Source: Selaginella moellendorffii (taxonomy: Eukaryota > Plantae > Lycopodiophyta). From it: a DNA stretch of 64,000 bases. A model generated the notes under the pieces. That model searched no databases and was not told the origin of the DNA. It saw only the letters and a list, made by a program, of their open reading frames with translations. How positions within the stretch are numbered: position 1 is the stretch's first letter; each line of letters begins with the position of its first letter. A program made the translations under genes and the position numbers. The DNA lies in assembly GCF_000143415.4 (NCBI RefSeq), contig NW_003314281.1:1042833-1106832 (forward strand). Reading direction: 5' to 3'. Of this stretch, positions 54,073 to 61,800 are shown one piece after another.

Positions 54073-55145
54073 TTTGGCCCGGGGGAAACAAAACCCTAGC
54101 GCTAGGGCTATGGGCAGATATTCCGTCAGCTTGACGGAATGTCTTTCCCGACATCTACTCCATACATTTTAAATATATATATTAGTTTTAATATTATATG
54201 TATTAAATTGGGGAATCCAAAAACGAGGATTTGAAGAAACATCAGGTGGAGCAACAATATATTCGTTGCCAGCACAAAGTTAAGTGCTTCCATGACAGAA
54301 AAAAGAAAGATTCTTATTCATAAGAACAAGCAAAGGTGGAAGAACGAAGAAGATAGACCGATTATTTTTTTAATTCTGGAGGGCTGAATGTTGTGGCAAA
54401 CCTCAGGCCCTATTTGCTGCCGCACTTCCACTGAGTAAGCAGACCCCTTAGACAAAGCACGATTGGGAAAATAAATCAACTGGGTGGATGGGAGTTGTAT
54501 TGTTGGTATGGTCTCACTTGTATGAAGAATGATCTTTAAATATACCATCCACCAAAAATGAAGAAAAATAAAATAAAATAAAATTGAGCTTCACACTTGT
54601 GCAACTTATGACCTCAAAATTCTTCTGTCTCTGTCTAAGGGCATTACAAAACTTCTAAAATTTACAACAAAACACAGAAAACAAAGCAGCATATAAACTT
54701 GATCAAGATGCCATCAGACTAGGACATCAACTCCAACAACACATACCACCTTGCCTAAGGTGGCTGTATGGACTCCATCTCTACCATCACCTTGTAGTTA
54801 AGATGCAACTCCAAGCACGTCTTGAGATCATAGTGGAATCTGAAAGTGCTGTCCACCCAAACATGCACAGTGCGGCTCAAATCTGCTGTCCATGTTATGA
54901 GATAGCTTTTTGAAGCCCTGCGAAAGTACACAAGCAAAGTTATAGAAAACAAAACGAGAGCAATCTAACTTACTAGTAGAGAAAAACGCATGGTCTGCAT
55001 GGTGTCAAAGCCGAGACAAAACTTGTGGCCGACTTCCAGCTCAGGAACTCCAAAACTCTCCAAATAGAGCTTCACGATCAGCTTCCAAATGGTGTATATT
55101 ACTTCCAGGAATTAGACTTCAACATTGTATAATCACAAGTGTTTT

Positions 55146-55415
55146 TCAAAATTGAGGGACACAATAACCAAACGCTCCTACTCCTTGGAGTATGGAAACA
55201 TACCCTTCACAACATTTCTCTGGGTCACCAAAACCCTTACACAAAGGCTCGAAACAATCCTGAAGTAGTTTGCGATGCCCAGTCAAGTGATCTAAAATGC
55301 AGAAAATTAGATTCAGTATTAAAATCGCCGCAGAAGAACTTATTTGTGTTATAAACACAAATGAGATGAAAACAATCATGAACAAAACTAGACTCAGCTT
55401 CTGAAAATTGCCCAT
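55146..55415 (-). CDS. Secreted knottin/ICK-like cysteine-rich peptide, possibly degenerate (5 Cys)
   Basis: Signal peptide, RKLL pro-site, then C-x4-C-x8-CC...YC. Confidence 0.55.
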   Translation of the reverse strand: MGNFQKLSLVLFMIVFISFVFITQISSSAAILILNLIFCILDHLTGHRKLLQDCFEPLCKGFGDPEKCCEGYVSILQGVGAFGYCVPQF

Positions 55416-55740
55416 TCCCCACTAGAGCCAAAGCAAAAGTTATGTCAGACTCGGTACAAAGTCAGCTTGACAGTGGATACGACCCGTCACACAGTGCATA
55501 TGGTTGCTTAAGAATTTAAAGCCTTGAGTCACTTAAAGCTACCTTGAAAACTGATTATAATTCACAGGTGTTTCTATGGAACATGATACAATCCACTCAA
55601 GACGTCTTTCACTTTTACTGTGAGCAGACATTCCGTCAACATGGGGAAATGAGCTCTTTGCCCTCCGTCGGTCGGTGGTTTCGGGGAGTGGATTTAAAAA
55701 GAACTGTGTAGAGATGTCCGTTCCCCCGCGTGTGTGAGGA

Positions 55741-56300
55741 ATGGAGGTTTGTCCGCTGCTTGCGCTTCGAATCAGGCTTGTGATCCAGAAGCTCAAACGC
55801 GCCGCGCTCAGGCTTAAAGGTAGATCGTCCATTGTTCTTTGGATCCCAGAGATTTAGCTTCTTATCAGGAAAGAAGAAGAGGAAGAGCTCCACAGAGCAG
55901 AGAATCCAGCCGGCTAGAAGACCACCCGAGGAAATCAAGAGAGACTATGGATTCCAGGTCCGCAAATCATCTGGCAATAGAGATGCTAGCTTTGTTTTGG
56001 TTCTTACTTGAGTGCATCTCTCTTATTGACAGGATTCTCCAGCAGCAAAGGCCAGGGCTGCTCTAGCAGAGCGCCACGAGAAGCTCGAGGTAAATTGGAT
56101 CTTAGATCTTACACTCTTTTTTAGACTAGGAAGAGAGATTCCAGTCCAGATTCCCACTATCTCACTTTTAAACAACGGTCCAGAGGGTAGAGGACAAGGC
56201 CCAAACACTACAGAGCAGTGCGGAGAACTTCGCCGGGCTGGCGAGAGAGGTGGTGAGAGAGGCGGAGAAGACGAAATGGTGGCAAGTTTGGAGATATTGA
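55741..56300 (+). CDS. Soluble tomosyn-type R-SNARE-only small protein, copy 1 (4 exons, ~113 aa)
   Basis: Spliced: MEVCPLLALRIRLVIQKLKRAALRLK|GKKKRKSS..EIKRDYGFQ|DSPAAKARAALAERHEKLE|RVEDKAQTLQSSAENFAGLAREVVREAEKTKWWQVWRY*. Confidence 0.72.
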
Positions 56301-56610
56301 TCGTTCGTTGCTTAAACAAACAAAAAGACTATGCTCGATCGATTTTGATGATCGCGTAGTTCTTTCTGGAACCCAACGTGAACGCGCGCTTGTAAATCTC
56401 GTTGATCGATTCGCCCGGAAACCGGGTCCGGGGTGAAGAAGGAAGAATGGGGCCTCTTCGGGGGGCCAAACCGCCCACTGTCTGCTGCCCCATCCTCGGC
56501 GCGGGCAGACGCCTCCCAGCCAGAGAGGGGAGGGAGGAGGGCGAACGGCTTCTTCGGCCGCCCCACGCAAAAACCAGCGGAGAGTGGAAGAATGTTTGCT
56601 GTGGCCCGCC

Positions 56611-56815
56611 AAGATCGGCTTTAGATTTCCCACCATTTCAGCCGGACAACGTTAGGCTCTTTGGATTGCAGAAAGATGATGCTCACCTGCAAGCGCTCCT
56701 GCCGTTCCATCAATCGATCTCTAGCGTGTGCCGCGGCGCTGCTTGCCTCCTAAACCCCATTCATGCAAATTCGAGTGAGTGAATGAGCTGAAAGTTAGTT
56801 ATCGCTGCTCGGATC
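56611..56815 (-). pseudogene. Truncated copy of the tomosyn/Lgl 3' end
   Basis: Matches 58855-59160 but most of the last exon is deleted. Confidence 0.8.
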
Positions 56816-57535
56816 TTCCCGACAGAACGCCAGTTTAATTATTTATTGTTCACAGACTAAATGTTGTTTAGTTTGTGTGTGTGTACGTATATATATTTTA
56901 AATTTGAGGAATCCGGATTTGAAGGAACGTCCAGTGGAGCTCAATCATCACATATCCATAAATTCTGGAGGGCTGAATGTTATGGCGAACCTCAGGCCTA
57001 TTTGCTGCGCACTTCCACTGAGTAAGCAGACCCCTTAGACAAAGCACGATTGGGAAAACAACCAATTGGGTGGATGAGAGTTGTAATGTTGTCATGGTAT
57101 GAAGTAAAATCTTTAAATATATCATCCATCAAAAGTGAAAAAAAGAAAATAAATATTGAGCTTACCTGCCTCAAAACTTATTTATATTTGCTCTGCAGAT
57201 TTACAACAAAACACAGAAAACAAAGAAGCATATAAGCTTGAACGAGATGCCATCAGACTAGGACAGGATCAACTCGAACAACACATACCACCTCGCGTAA
57301 GGTGGCTGTATGCTCGTAGTTAAGATGCAACTCCAAGCACGTCTTGAATCACGGTGGAACAGCCCTGCGAAAGTAAGCAAAGGTATAAAAAGAAAAACGA
57401 GAGCAATCTAACTTACTAGTAGAGAAAAACGCATGGTGCCGAGACAAAACTTGTGGCCGACTTCCAGCTCAGGAAGTCCAAAACTCTCCAACTAGAGCTT
57501 CATTATCATGGGCTTGTGCTTCAAAAGACTGCATA

Positions 57536-57763
57536 TTACTTCCAGGAACTAGACTGCAACATTGTATAATCACACGTGTCACCAAAACCCCCACGCAAAG
57601 GCTTGAAACAATCCTGACGTAGTTTGCGAAGGAGTATCTGAAATGCAGAAGATTCAACATTAAAATCTGGGCTTATGAACATGGCCGCAGAAGAGCTTAT
57701 TTGTGTCATAACACAAATGAGATGAAAACAATTATGAAGACTCAGCTTCTGAAAATTGCCCAT
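57536..57763 (-). pseudogene. Degenerate second copy of the knottin-like peptide gene
   Basis: Deletions in the signal peptide and across the CC..C core relative to 55146-55415. Confidence 0.65.
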
Positions 57764-58138
57764 TTCCCTCTAGAGCCAGAGCAAAAGTTATGTCCTCGTC
57801 TTACACATTTATATATACATATATACAAAGTCAGCTCTACAGTGGATACGACCACGTCACACTGTGCATATGGTTGCTTAAAAATTTAAAGCCTCGAGTC
57901 ACATTCAATCATACACGCAATTGGTTAAAGTTACCTGGAAAACTGATTATAATTCGCCAGGTGTTTCTATGGAACATGATACAATCCACTCTCTTGTGAG
58001 CAGATATTCCGTCAATATAACGGAATGTGCTCCCTGCCCTCCGTCAGTCAGTGGTTTCGCGGAGTGAATATTCGGTGTGGATTTAAAAAAGAACTGTGTA
58101 GAGATGTCCGTCGCCTGTCTCCCCCGCGTGTGTGAGGA

Positions 58139-58678
58139 ATGGAGGTTTTTCCACTGCTTGCGCTTCGAATCAGGCTTGTGATCCAGAAGCTCAAACGCGC
58201 CGCGCTCAGGCTTAAAGGTAGATCGTCCATTGCTCTTTGGATCCCAGAGATTTAGCTTCTTATCAGGAAAGAAGAAGAGGAAGAGATCCACAGAGCAGAG
58301 AATCCAGCCGGCTAGAAGAACACCCAAGGAAATCAAGAGAGAATATGGATTTGAGGTCCGCAAATCAACTGGCAATAGAGATGCTAGCTTTGTTTTGGAT
58401 CTTACTTGAGGGCCTCTCTCTTATTGACAGGATTCTCCAGCAGCGAAGGCCAGAGCTGCTCTAGCAGAGCGCCAGGAGAAGCTCAAGGTAAAGTGGATCT
58501 ACTCTTTTTTAGAGTAGGAAGAGAGATTCCAGCCCAGATTCCCACTATCTCACTTTAAACAACGCTCCAGAGGGTAGAGGACAAGGCCCAAGCACTACAC
58601 AGCAATTCGGAGAACTTCGCCGCGACGGCGAGAGAGCTGGAGAAGATGATGGCCTCTCGCAAATGGTGGCAAGTTTAG
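58139..58678 (+). CDS. Soluble tomosyn-type R-SNARE-only small protein, copy 2 (exons 58139-58217, 58267-58355, 58431-58487, 58571-58678; 110 aa)
   Basis: Spliced: MEVFPLLALRIRLVIQKLKRAALRLK|GKKKRKRSTEQRIQPARRTPKEIKREYGFE|DSPAAKARAALAERQEKLK|RVEDKAQALHSNSENFAATARELEKMMASRKWWQV*; all introns GT-AG. Confidence 0.75.
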
Positions 58679-58864
58679 AAAGATTGATCGTTCGTTCGTT
58701 AGCTCTTCGTCAAACAAACAAAAGAACTAGGCTCGATCGATTTTGATGATCGAGTAGTTCGCGTAGTTCTTTCTAGAATCCACCTCGCTAAAGCAATGAG
58801 AGGGAGGGACGTGGACGCGCGCTTGTAAATCTCGTTGATCGATTCGAAAGTGACAAGATCGGCT

Positions 58865-61800
58865 TTAGATTTCCCACCATTTTCTAGACTCCATTTTCTT
58901 CGCGAGCTCTTCAGCCATTGATGCAAAGTTCTCTGCGCTGTCTTGCATTTCTTCCGTCCTCCGGTTTATGTTCTGTTACCAGCCGGACAACGTTAGGCTC
59001 TTTGGATTGCAGAAAGAACATGCTCACCTGCAAGCGCTCCTGCCGTTCCATCAATCGATCTCTGGTGTGTGCCGCGGCGCTGCTTGCTTCCTAAACCCCA
59101 TTCATGCAAAATCGAGTGAGTGAATGAGCTGAAAGAAACTTCTCTGGTAGTTAGTTACCGCAGATCTTTTGTGACCATAGGCTGCCTTGATCTCTTCGGC
59201 TGTTCGCATTGTCGGCGTTTTGCTTGATTGTTTAGTCTCCGTTGAGCCACCTTCAAAAAGCATATTTCTCTCCTCGTCCTCGTCCCCTTTGATAGAAGCT
59301 TTCTTCTTGCCTGCTAAAAGCAAACGATTGTAAGATTGATTCTTGTACTAGAAAGAAGTACCTTTGTTGAAGCTACTTCTCAACTTTCTCATCACACCGC
59401 CCTTTTTTACCGAGCCTTCCGAAGGCGATGGCGATGGCGATTTCAAGTCGTCGTCACCGAGATCGATGTCATCTGCAGAGCCATAGTGTGAGAGAGAAAG
59501 AGAGAATTGGAACCTTGACCTTACCAATATCTAACTCAGTTTCTTTATCAGGACTGTCGGTCTGCCGCTCAGTATGTTGCTCGGCATTTCGATCACTATG
59601 GCGTTCGTTGGAAGAAGACTCTGAACTCGCAGCCGCCTTCAGCCTTTTCACTATACTAGTTCCATGGGAGGCGACCGGTGACACTTGCTTCGAGAAAAGC
59701 TTGGGGAGCTCAAGGGCCGTACGCTCCCCGCCCACAGCATTGCCTAGAGAATGCTTTAATTCTTTCATAACTCCGCCAAAAAGATCCTGGATCTGACTTT
59801 GCTGTAGAACGAAAGACATTTACATTTACATCAGTCAGTAAGCCAAGAGAAAAAACAAGCTCTCACCTTCTTCTTGGCTGCTTGAACACTCGCTTTGATG
59901 GCTGCTTCTGTTGCTGTGGCAACATCTTTATCGTATAGTAGCGGGTAAGAGCCCGGTAACCTGTTCCAAATGTTTTAGCTATTAAAGAAACTTTCCACTA
60001 ACACACCTCATGTCGTTTTCATCTGCAACGACTGACATAAACAAAACCTCCTGATCTGCATCAACCTGTCAAAAGACCATTCAGTATGGAGATGATGGAA
60101 AATGATAGTCGACATACTGCAGTTACACGTCCATTGGATGCTACAGCAAAAGTTCTGAAGAAGCTTGGACTGCTGCCAAATTCCCAACGTAAAGACTCAC
60201 TTAGCGAGGTTAATTTGATAACCTCCAACGCTGGTAACGACCTGCTGGCACAAAGAACATTAAAACAATGCATTACAACCCTGGCAACGTTACCGGATTT
60301 CAATATCACCGGTATCATATAAAAGAAGAAGACCGGAGCCGTGTATTCCGCTATCAAATACCGATGCCGCGCAGCAAGGCTTTTCAAGTCTTTCTTTTCT
60401 AATTGTTGTTCGCATTCCCTGAAACAAAGCATTTGGAACAAAACCTTTGAATTCTTTAGAATAACGAACCTGAAGAACAGATGAAATAGAATACACGCGC
60501 AATGAATCTTCAGAGCATAATAGTACGAGGTTGTCAGATCCTGTCCAGTCGTCGTCCTGTTTCACATCCTCCTCTATTTCTTCGTTCCCTTCGGCAGGTT
60601 CAATATGGCTACCTGAGCTGTCAGTCTCAATAACAGCCATTACAACGGACCGTTTAGAGGCTTTCCTTGAAGGAGCTCGAGATACTGATTTTACTGACGA
60701 TCCTGATGGATCTGATTAAGAGGACATACAATTCAGCATCCAGCTAGCTTTTGGAAAAAAGGGAGAAAGGCGTACCGAGAACATGTAGAGAAATCGCAAC
60801 GGAAGGATTATTAGGACGACCAGAGCCAATAGTCTTCCCGCTGCTGCCATCAATTGCAGCAATACACGCATCCTTCAGTAACACAAGCACAATAGTGTCT
60901 TGTTTGAACGATTTTGGGTCGCGTGCTAGAAGACTTATAAAACAAGACGAGACAATTCCTGAGGGACTCCCACATTTCCCATGGAAACGAACCACGCAAG
61001 CTTCGATATCGAACAAGGTAACCTGTTTCAAAAACCCGATCAGTCGTAAAAACAATAAATGCTTGTGCATACCAATCCATTGTCATCGCCAATTGCAATA
61101 CAACGACAGTCGGTTCTGATAGTTAAGCTTCTGATTGGTGCTGTGTGGAGGTTTAGAATAGCAAAACACTGAAACCCAGCAGAATACTCTATTTCTCTTT
61201 CTGCAGGCGGAAGGTGATTCTGTAAGCTTTGTGACGCAAAAACAAATTTTACTTGTCGATGGCTCGTTCTTGCTGATAAAATGGCACGTCCCTTCCCCCG
61301 ATTCGCCTTGCATTGTATATACAAAAACCTGCGCGTGGTGAAATTCATATCCATTGGGTAATTCTCCAAAAAGAAACTTACAAGACCAGCCTCGTCACCA
61401 GCTGCTAGCAGCCCAACCGTTGGACAGAAGTCAATAGCACATGTGGAGGCTAATTCCGATCCTACCAGCTCCTGTACAATGGTTTTCAGCGTTTGGAGTT
61501 ACACAAATCATTCGCTTACTCTATTATTCACCGACGCCAAAAAATAGAGACATGGTGTTGAAGCGTCCCAAACGTTGATCAGACCATTTTCATGACCAGT
61601 TATGTAGAGACAGGGTGGCGACCTTCTGTCAACGGTAGTAGAGCTGAAGTTTCCGCCACTGACAGGCCATCTCATTCCTGATGGAAACGCAGGAGGCACG
61701 TTACCCTTCAATAAGCGTGGAATCTGATCCATAAAAAGATTAGGCATACATCATAAAGCAAGAAGAACGAGCCTACCTTCAGTATAATACTTGCAACTAT

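What the first reader, a model, noticed from the sequence alone, without database searches (positions are those of the whole stretch)
55741..58678. Two intact genes for a stand-alone soluble tomosyn-type R-SNARE microprotein, next to tomosyn itself
Seen: two four-exon genes missed by the ORF track (55741-56300 and 58139-58678). They encode ~110-aa proteins with an amphipathic/basic N-terminus, a GKKKRK stretch, and the tomosyn tail (EIKxxYG, LAERQEKL..AENFA...KWW). There are no WD40 propellers and no TM anchor. The last two introns fall at the same positions and phase as in the adjacent tomosyn gene, but the sequence is well diverged and on the opposite strand. Both copies keep frame, splice sites, the zero-layer Arg and KWW despite many substitutions, while the neighbouring knottin copy and tomosyn fragment have decayed. 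Known: tomosyn and amisyn R-SNARE motifs compete with VAMP for Q-SNAREs. Inference: a microProtein-like SNARE decoy born by old partial inverted duplication, which could inhibit or tune exocytosis. I do not recognise it as a described plant family.
Basis: partly seen in the sequence, partly recalled or inferred. Interest (0 to 1): 0.85.

Follow-up and report, generated by a model that had tools for sequence, protein, structure and literature searches.

The report
Two small tomosyn-tail R-SNARE genes
This spikemoss carries two expressed, spliced small genes that encode only the SNARE-binding tail of the neighbouring secretion brake tomosyn; they may act as small soluble regulators of secretion, but that role has not been tested.

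Summary
The window is Selaginella moellendorffii. Two four-exon genes (55741-56300 and 58139-58678, + strand) encode 113-aa and 110-aa proteins. Each has a basic amphipathic N-terminus, GKKKRK, and a tomosyn-type R-SNARE motif with zero-layer Arg70, hydrophobic layers -3 to +8, and KWW. Neither has WD40 repeats or a membrane anchor.

Stranded RNA-seq confirms every predicted junction. No upstream exon is joined to exon 1.

All three introns, not two, sit at the position and phase of tomosyn's last three introns. Intron sequences no longer align with tomosyn's, so the partial inverted copy is far older than the tandem duplication (about 4% intron divergence).

Selection is mixed. The tomosyn-proximal copy compared with its allele on the other haplotype gives dN/dS 0.08 (p = 6e-4). 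Between paralogs dN/dS is about 1.2, with changes concentrated in exon 4.

The genes are not new to databases: they are SELMODRAFT_413339 and SELMODRAFT_413340, annotated as hypothetical V-SNARE proteins. I found no paper describing such proteins. No ortholog outside this species was found.

Similar tail-only genes are annotated in poplar (also beside tomosyn), flax, coca and grasses. A third, N-terminally anchored one exists in this genome.

This scan already noted the same pair on the other haplotype scaffold (s1-344410). Q-SNARE binding and a decoy function remain inference.

The parts
55741..56300 (+). Mini-tomosyn copy 1 (tomosyn-distal), 113 aa, = SELMODRAFT_413339. Exons 55741-55819, 55869-55957, 56033-56089, 56184-56300.
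   Evidence: Translation and GT..AG introns. Matches P0004. Junction reads: 55819/55869 5+5; 55957/56033 0+3 plus an X1 contig; 56089/56184 0+4 plus an X1 contig. Depth is low on exons 2-4 (2-7).
58139..58678 (+). Mini-tomosyn copy 2 (tomosyn-proximal), 110 aa, = SELMODRAFT_413340. Exons 58139-58217, 58267-58355, 58431-58487, 58571-58678.
   Evidence: 100% identical to P0001. Junction reads: 13+7, 14+21 and 9+12, plus allele-derived reads. Depth 15-31. dN/dS 0.08 against the haplotype allele.
55693..55700 (+). TATA-like TTTAAAAA, about 40-48 nt upstream of the copy 1 ATG.
   Evidence: Read from the sequence. RNA depth rises from about 1 to 21 between bins 55574-55710 and 55711-55847, and molecules end at 55738. 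Promoter role is inferred.
58082..58090 (+). TATA-like TTTAAAAAA, about 49-57 nt upstream of the copy 2 ATG.
   Evidence: Read from the sequence. Depth is 4 in bin 58040-58176 and 28 in the next bin. Promoter role is inferred.
58865..59310 (-). Last three exons of the parent gene tomosyn (LOC9636559, 1138/1139 aa): 59310-59159, 59090-59028, 58972-58865 including the stop codon. They lie tail-to-tail with copy 2, with 186 nt between the two stop codons.
   Evidence: Sequence. Junction reads with CT..AC ends. Identity to P0024. Intron positions and phases match those of the mini genes.
56610..56748 (-). Decayed tomosyn tail fragment in repeat unit 1. It holds a copy of the penultimate exon (56687-56748, 3 differences from the real exon) and a 29-nt remnant of the last exon (56610-56638).
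   Evidence: Self-blastn and exon comparison. Reads mapping here all carry A>G at 56723 and join real tomosyn exons, so they come from the other haplotype's tomosyn allele and not from this fragment.
54372..59135 (.). Tandem duplication that made the two mini-gene copies. Unit 1 is 54372-56794 and unit 2 is 56961-59135.
   Evidence: Self-blastn, 77-96% identity with many indels. Per-100-column divergence is 1-23% where the units align.

Best explanation
These are two real, transcribed, protein-coding partial duplicates of the 3' end of the neighbouring tomosyn gene of Selaginella moellendorffii. An old inverted DNA-level copy kept tomosyn's last three introns and coding exons and gained a new 26-codon first exon and its own promoter. 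A much later tandem duplication doubled it.

Each product is a basic protein of about 13 kDa. It has an N-terminal amphipathic helix and a polybasic GKKKRK stretch, a short linker, and one long helix that is a tomosyn-type R-SNARE motif (Arg at layer 0, hydrophobic layers -3 to +8, C-terminal RKWW). There is no propeller and no membrane anchor.

The most likely mechanism is inferred, not shown. The motif would zipper with plasma-membrane Qa (SYP1) and Qbc (SNAP33) SNAREs into a four-helix bundle that cannot drive fusion. It would thereby compete with VAMP72 and damp or hold exocytic acceptor complexes, as the tomosyn tail and vertebrate amisyn do. The basic amphipathic N-terminus may hold it on anionic membranes. 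The proximal copy is the conserved working copy. The distal copy is evolving fast, either relaxed or diversifying.
For: Shown. Intact frames and canonical splice sites. All six junctions are read in stranded RNA-seq, in the correct orientation. Spliced contigs appear in two further studies, and there is no joint into exon 1. Depth is roughly a fifth to a third of the tomosyn tail.

Family signal. Pfam Synaptobrevin E 8e-6. The best PDB match is the tomosyn SNARE motif, with Arg70 on the zero layer. A profile search hits more than 100 tomosyn tails, down to E 1e-12. AlphaFold predicts helices 5-32 and 59-109. No TM segment.

Origin. Intron positions and phases are identical to tomosyn's: AAAG|G.AAGAAGAA in phase 1, then two phase-0 introns. 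There is 84% identity over 25 nt across the first acceptor and 72% over 68 nt in exon 4. The intron bodies are not alignable with tomosyn's (p = 0.09-0.8; the third intron was compared 3 nt short at its 3' end). The two mini copies differ by only 4.3% in their introns.

Constraint. Copy 2 against its haplotype allele shows 7 synonymous and 2 non-synonymous changes, w = 0.08, binomial p = 6e-4. Layer positions 0 to +8 stay hydrophobic or small in all four alleles.

Published background. [quoted passage not shown]
Against: dN/dS between the paralogs is 1.0-1.3 overall and 1.2-2.7 in exon 4.

Only S. moellendorffii proteins match over the full length, although the gene looks old.

Layers -7 to -4 contain Pro and Gly, so the motif is N-terminally short. 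The plant tomosyn tail shares this feature.

KKKRKR also reads as a classical nuclear localisation signal.

The Pfam score lies just under the gathering threshold in my scan.
Confidence: 0.55

Rival explanations
1. These are transcribed but functionless lineage-specific duplicates drifting towards pseudogenes. This would apply above all to the distal copy 1. The open frames would persist by chance and by gene conversion.
For: Paralog dN/dS is about 1.2, and exon 4 is the most diverged part of the gene. Copy 1 has low depth on exons 2-4 and a rearranged, extended C-terminus. No orthologs were found elsewhere. The neighbouring tomosyn fragment has decayed.
Against: The copy is far older than the tandem duplication, since its introns no longer align with the parent's. 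Yet it keeps its frame, three intron pairs and the heptad core. The copy 2 allele comparison gives w = 0.08, p = 6e-4. The exons carry no indels, while the flanks are full of them. All four alleles are spliced and expressed.
Confidence: 0.2
2. The proteins are functional but are not SNARE decoys. The very basic N-terminus with KKKRKR may take them to the nucleus or nucleolus or onto nucleic acid. Alternatively, the helix may pair with some other coiled-coil partner, for example tomosyn itself.
For: pI is 10.4-11.0, net charge is +12 in the first 34 residues, and a classical NLS-like motif is present. The exposed faces of the SNARE helix change quickly.
Against: The conserved features are the specific R-SNARE ones: Arg at layer 0, layers +1 to +8, and RKWW. 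Polybasic stretches next to amphipathic helices are also typical binders of anionic membranes.
Confidence: 0.12
3. The main role lies at the RNA level. Copy 2 converges on tomosyn and their 3' ends overlap, so the pair may act as a natural antisense regulator of tomosyn.
For: Only 186 nt separate the stop codons. Reads of both orientations cover 58588-58861.
Against: This does not explain the conserved frame, the low allelic dN/dS, or copy 1, which faces only a dead fragment. No small-RNA data were examined.
Confidence: 0.06
4. The models are the 3' exons of a longer gene, WD40-bearing or otherwise, whose upstream exons were missed.
For: A few reads and one contig extend to 55658-55710, upstream of the TATA-like box.
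Against: No splice joint enters exon 1. Depth falls 20-fold just upstream of the ATG. RefSeq and JGI models are 110-124 aa. The upstream neighbours in the other haplotype are small genes on the other strand.
Confidence: 0.03

Closest known systems
Tomosyn / STXBP5 of plants (Arabidopsis AtTMS/TYN11 At5g05570 and TYN12 At4g35560; here LOC9636559 in the same window)
   Same: The C-terminal R-SNARE motif ends in RKWW and carries the EIKxxYG box. All three intron positions and phases are the same. The genes are physically adjacent.
   Different: The roughly 1000-residue double WD40 propeller is missing, and a new 26-residue N-terminus is present. The tail is only 36-39% identical over the last exon. 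It lies on the opposite strand.
Amisyn (STXBP6) of vertebrates
   Same: It is a small protein whose only SNARE element is a tomosyn-like R-SNARE motif without a membrane anchor. From my own knowledge of the literature, it forms non-fusogenic complexes with syntaxin-1 and SNAP-25 and has an N-terminal membrane-lipid-binding module. This is the closest functional analogue.
   Different: It has an independent origin and is restricted to vertebrates. Its N-terminal module is a PH domain, which is absent here. No plant counterpart is described in the papers I could search.
Tail-only tomosyn-like proteins annotated in angiosperms: Populus LOC7460359/POPTR_016G117700, Linum, Erythroxylum, Nepenthes, Lonicera, Setaria LOC117838980, Hordeum LOC123448916, Oryza DAI22_03g139600
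   Same: They are proteins of about 70-130 aa that end in a tomosyn R-SNARE motif and carry no propeller. The poplar gene also lies directly beside full-length tomosyn.
   Different: Their N-termini are unrelated. The poplar gene is on the same strand as tomosyn. The tree cannot tell whether they share an origin with the Selaginella genes. All are uncharacterised.
SELMODRAFT_411303 (P0021) of the same genome
   Same: It is a short (153 aa) tomosyn-tail protein. It shares tomosyn's last two introns.
   Different: It has an N-terminal hydrophobic anchor instead of an amphipathic basic helix. It lacks the GKKK intron, sits on another scaffold, and has a more conservative tail (56% identity to a full-length tomosyn tail, P0094).
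Exocytic R-SNAREs VAMP721/722 and the plant microProtein concept (e.g. LITTLE ZIPPER; from my own knowledge)
   Same: Like VAMP72, it has an R-SNARE motif with Arg at layer 0. Like microProteins, it is a truncated paralogue that keeps only the interaction domain.
   Different: It has no longin domain and no tail anchor, so it cannot be fusogenic. A dominant-negative action is not demonstrated.

Membership tests
R-SNARE (Pfam PF00957 Synaptobrevin) | Significant match to the family profile | tested here: inconclusive
   E 8e-6 and 2e-5, but 26.0 and 24.6 bits against the gathering score of 26.4. The database's precomputed annotation lists PF00957 for three of the four alleles.
R-SNARE (Pfam PF00957 Synaptobrevin) | Arginine at the zero layer, with heptad hydrophobic layers around it | tested here: met
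   Arg70 aligns with the zero-layer Arg of tomosyn (1URQ) and VAMP2. Layers -3 to +8 are A, A, L, R, L, V, A, L, S, F, A, L. Layers -7 to -4 are not heptad-like because they hold Pro, Tyr and Glu.
R-SNARE (Pfam PF00957 Synaptobrevin) | C-terminal transmembrane anchor (fusogenic brevins and longins) | tested here: not met
   The protein ends 2-5 residues after KWW. The highest hydropathy mean is 0.92. The same is true of tomosyn and amisyn.
Tomosyn / Lgl family | Two N-terminal WD40 beta-propellers | tested here: not met
   The products are 110-113 aa. No upstream exon is joined in RNA-seq. So this is a derivative of tomosyn, not a tomosyn.
Tomosyn / Lgl family | Tomosyn-type tail (EIKxxYG box, ERxEKL, AENFA, RKWW end) and descent from a tomosyn gene | tested here: met
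   Profile hits are almost all tomosyn C-termini. Three intron positions are shared with the adjacent tomosyn, and nucleotide similarity remains.
Amisyn (STXBP6) | N-terminal PH domain followed by a tomosyn-like R-SNARE motif | tested here: not met
   There is no Pfam domain N-terminal of the motif. The N-terminus is a single predicted helix. It is an analogue only.
microProtein (truncated paralogue acting through the retained interaction domain) | Small size, descent from a larger multi-domain protein, and only the interaction domain retained | tested here: met
microProtein (truncated paralogue acting through the retained interaction domain) | Titrates the partners of the parent protein (here the Q-SNAREs) | not testable with these tools
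No complex prediction was run.

The most novel reading that the evidence does not exclude
Land plants may have repeatedly made stand-alone tomosyn-tail R-SNARE proteins by partial duplication of tomosyn. Examples are two soluble and one N-terminally anchored form in Selaginella, a Malpighiales clade that in poplar still sits beside tomosyn, and a grass group. Together these would form an undescribed class of small exocytosis regulators that work like vertebrate amisyn.
Probability: 0.3. Interest if true: 0.7.

Novelty: new variant of a known kind. Interest (0 to 1): 0.5.

Why it matters
Tomosyn is the only known R-SNARE-type brake on secretion in plants, and its knock-outs have little phenotype. 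If small tail-only paralogues bind the same Q-SNAREs, they would be unrecognised regulators of exocytosis. Exocytosis underlies growth, cell-wall delivery and defence.

They would also be easy to test, because each is about 110 aa and a single helix. Their repeated appearance in a lycophyte, in grasses and in Malpighiales would be a clear example of microProtein evolution by partial gene duplication.

If they are inert, the locus still documents how a gene fragment can gain a promoter and a first exon and stay spliced for a long time.

Tried and rejected
Phylogeny of the 80-residue tails. The mini genes form one long branch (0.95) whose position is unresolved. AU tests reject neither a clade with Selaginella tomosyn (p = 0.107) nor a clade with the Malpighiales short proteins (p = 0.222). 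The origin therefore rests on synteny and introns, not on the tree.

Homology of exon 1 to tomosyn's preceding exon. The local alignment is no better than shuffles. An end-anchored alignment reaches p = 0.007, but its boundaries were chosen after the fact. I treat this as suggestive only.

Apparent cross-copy splicing. Reads show joints 55819->58267, 58487->56184 and tomosyn->56748. I rejected trans-splicing and use of the fragment as an exon. The joined forms match the mosaic alleles of the other haplotype: its proximal allele has exon 1 identical to copy 1; reads carrying Asn57 fit its distal allele; and its tomosyn exon has G at the position equivalent to 56723.

Orthologue search. Two word-based searches and one exhaustive profile search found no full-length relative outside S. 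moellendorffii. The collections are thin for other lycophytes, so this is weak evidence of absence.

Literature. Six full-text searches found no description of tail-only tomosyn proteins in plants. One of them was badly framed and uninformative. Li et al. 2019 (PMC6836850) is not held.

Full report
**What is there.** The window comes from Selaginella moellendorffii. The spliced product of the second model is 100% identical to SELMODRAFT_413340, and the first corresponds to SELMODRAFT_413339.

- Copy 1 has exons 55741-55819, 55869-55957, 56033-56089 and 56184-56300 (113 aa).
- Copy 2 has exons 58139-58217, 58267-58355, 58431-58487 and 58571-58678 (110 aa).
- All introns are GT..AG.

The proteins are 80% identical to each other. 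No further copy lies in the window.

**Is it an R-SNARE?**
- Pfam Synaptobrevin matches both proteins at E 8e-6 and 2e-5, a fraction of a bit to two bits under the curated threshold.
- Against solved structures the best match is the SNARE motif of m-tomosyn (1URQ_A, E 0.022), followed by VAMP2. In those alignments AERQEKL lies on LDERGQKL and LERDQKL. Arg70 is therefore the zero-layer arginine, and layers +1 to +8 read L, V, A, L, S, F, A, L.
- An exhaustive profile search of 1.84 billion representatives gives 114 hits. Almost all are C-termini of tomosyns, down to E 1e-12.
- AlphaFold predicts an N-terminal helix (5-32), a short helix on EIKREYG, and one long helix (59-109). The usable motif thus runs from about layer -3 to beyond +8. 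Layers -7 to -4 hold Pro, Tyr and Glu, much as in the parent tail.
- There is no hydrophobic segment (maximum KD19 of 0.92). The first 34 residues carry a net charge of +12 and are amphipathic.

**Are they expressed, and are they whole genes?** I laid two stranded RNA-seq runs from 2026 and Logan contigs of two older runs from other studies on 55300-59400.
- RNA of the + strand covers both genes. Tomosyn shows the opposite orientation, as expected.
- Every predicted junction is read. For copy 2 the counts are 13+7, 14+21 and 9+12 reads. For copy 1 they are 5+5, 0+3 and 0+4 reads, plus spliced contigs.
- Depth on copy 2 is 15-31, against 54-138 on the tomosyn tail exons. Copy 1 is weak on exons 2-4.
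- No joint enters exon 1. Depth drops about 20-fold just upstream of the ATG, behind a TATA-like box. The 'longer WD40 gene' alternative therefore finds no support.

Several abundant 'impossible' joints also appear: exon 1 of copy 1 to exon 2 of copy 2, exon 3 of copy 2 back to exon 4 of copy 1, and tomosyn exons to the dead fragment at 56687-56748. Reads from the other haplotype explain them, because that haplotype's alleles are mosaics of the two window copies. Its proximal allele has an exon 1 identical to copy 1. Its distal allele carries Asn57 and an exon 4 like copy 1's. Its tomosyn exon differs from the fragment only at the position equivalent to 56723, which all those reads show. So four alleles are expressed, and the fragment itself is not shown to be.

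**Origin.** Tomosyn (LOC9636559, 1138/1139 aa) runs on the minus strand. Its last exons are 59310-59159, 59090-59028 and 58972-58865.
- The mini genes share not two but three introns with it.
- The first lies in phase 1 inside the Gly codon of K|GKKK (AAAG|GCAAGAAGAA in tomosyn, AAAG|GAAAGAAGAA in the mini gene).
- The two others lie in phase 0, after the YG box and after ER.EKL[KQ].
- Nucleotide similarity survives across the first acceptor (84% of 25 nt) and in exon 4 (72% of 68 nt, E 1e-8).
- The intron bodies are no longer alignable with tomosyn's (p = 0.09, 0.2, 0.8; the third intron was compared 3 nt short at its 3' end).
- The body of exon 1 has no convincing counterpart.

The gene is therefore a DNA-level, inverted partial copy of the tomosyn 3' end that acquired a new start. 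It is much older than the tandem duplication that doubled it. The two units (54372-56794 and 56961-59135) differ by only 4.3% in the mini-gene introns. Unit 1 also copied tomosyn's last two exons, and these have decayed to one exon copy and a 29-nt stub.

**Selection.**
- Between copy 2 and its allele on the other haplotype there are 7 synonymous and 2 non-synonymous differences (w = 0.08). The chance of 7 or more synonymous changes among 9 is 6e-4.
- Between paralogs w is 1.0-1.3 overall, 0.4-0.6 in exons 1-3, and 1.2-2.7 in exon 4.
- Exon 4 is five times more diverged than the introns (24 of 108 nt against 9 of 207 nt). Part of that is a compensating 12-nt insertion and deletion in copy 1, which also adds three residues.
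- The core layers stay hydrophobic or small in all alleles. Most changes fall on exposed positions and on the stretch between layer +8 and KWW.

My reading is that the proximal copy is constrained and the distal copy is relaxed or diversifying. The numbers are small.

**Distribution and prior knowledge.** Full-length relatives were found only in S. moellendorffii: two genes on each of two haplotype scaffolds. Public annotation calls them hypothetical or 'V-SNARE coiled-coil homology domain-containing' proteins.

The same genome has a third short tomosyn-tail gene, SELMODRAFT_411303. It has an N-terminal hydrophobic anchor and shares tomosyn's last two introns.

Tail-only proteins are also annotated in several angiosperms:
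- several Populus species (two paralogues), where the P. trichocarpa gene lies 0.7 kb downstream of full-length tomosyn on the same strand;
- Linum, Erythroxylum, Nepenthes and Lonicera;
- the grasses Setaria, Hordeum and Oryza.

The four Malpighiales proteins form a clade (93/87). The place of the Selaginella branch is unresolved.

I found no paper describing any of these proteins. Reviews list only full-length tomosyns in plants. [quoted passage not shown] This scan had already flagged the same gene pair on the other haplotype (s1-344410) and the anchored gene (s1-399048).

**Mechanism.** Shown: the structure of the genes, their transcription and splicing, their descent from tomosyn, and constraint on one copy. 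Inferred: that the helix enters SYP1-SNAP33 acceptor complexes in place of VAMP72 and so damps or parks them, as tomosyn's tail and amisyn do, and that the basic amphipathic N-terminus provides membrane contact. A nuclear role for KKKRKR, simple drift, or an antisense relation with tomosyn (stop codons 186 nt apart, reads of both strands over 58588-58861) remain possible.

**Verdict.** The genes are known to databases but not to the literature. I rate it a new variant of a known kind (anchorless tomosyn-type R-SNARE regulators), of moderate interest.

Noticed in passing
L002:6001-6582 (GL377579.1), protein P0021 / allele P0148: This is a third short tomosyn-tail gene of S. moellendorffii (153 aa). 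It has an N-terminal hydrophobic segment followed by KRQKKEK, and it shares tomosyn's last two introns. An R-SNARE motif anchored at the N-terminus instead of the tail is unusual. Only S. moellendorffii hits were found.
   Followed up: partly
L003:1130-10757 (Populus trichocarpa chr16); also P0046, P0054, P0062, P0100, P0010, P0013: Tail-only tomosyn-like proteins (about 100-110 aa) are annotated in Populus (two paralogues, several species), Linum, Erythroxylum, Nepenthes and Lonicera. The poplar gene lies 0.7 kb downstream of full-length tomosyn on the same strand. A Dovyalis gene model (P0005) fuses the tomosyn tail with the short gene.
   Followed up: partly
L004:10001-10772 (Setaria viridis); P0066 (Hordeum), P0071 (Oryza): Grasses also carry short tomosyn-tail proteins (71-129 aa) with a diverged tail (ENFA.LAQQI...KWW). 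The Setaria gene is not next to tomosyn.
   Followed up: partly
window 58588-58861: The 3' ends of mini gene copy 2 (+) and tomosyn (-) converge. Reads of both orientations overlap here, so this may be a natural antisense pair.
   Followed up: no
window 59311-59314 (minus strand): Tomosyn uses two acceptors 3 nt apart (tag|cag|G). The reads split roughly evenly: 81+32 against 48+42. This matches the 1139-aa and 1138-aa RefSeq isoforms.
   Followed up: partly
The second is truncated. RNA depth was 0-2 in the two runs laid.
   Followed up: no
window 56414-56609: A G+C-rich stretch in repeat unit 1 has no counterpart in unit 2. It replaces most of the copied last tomosyn exon. One X2 contig covers 56475-56592.
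   Followed up: no
L001:9647-10190 (other haplotype): Intron 1 is 42 nt in this haplotype, because of a 7-nt deletion. Its retention therefore stays in frame, which gives the 124-aa RefSeq isoform X1. In the window haplotype intron 1 is 49 nt, and retention would break the frame.
   Followed up: partly
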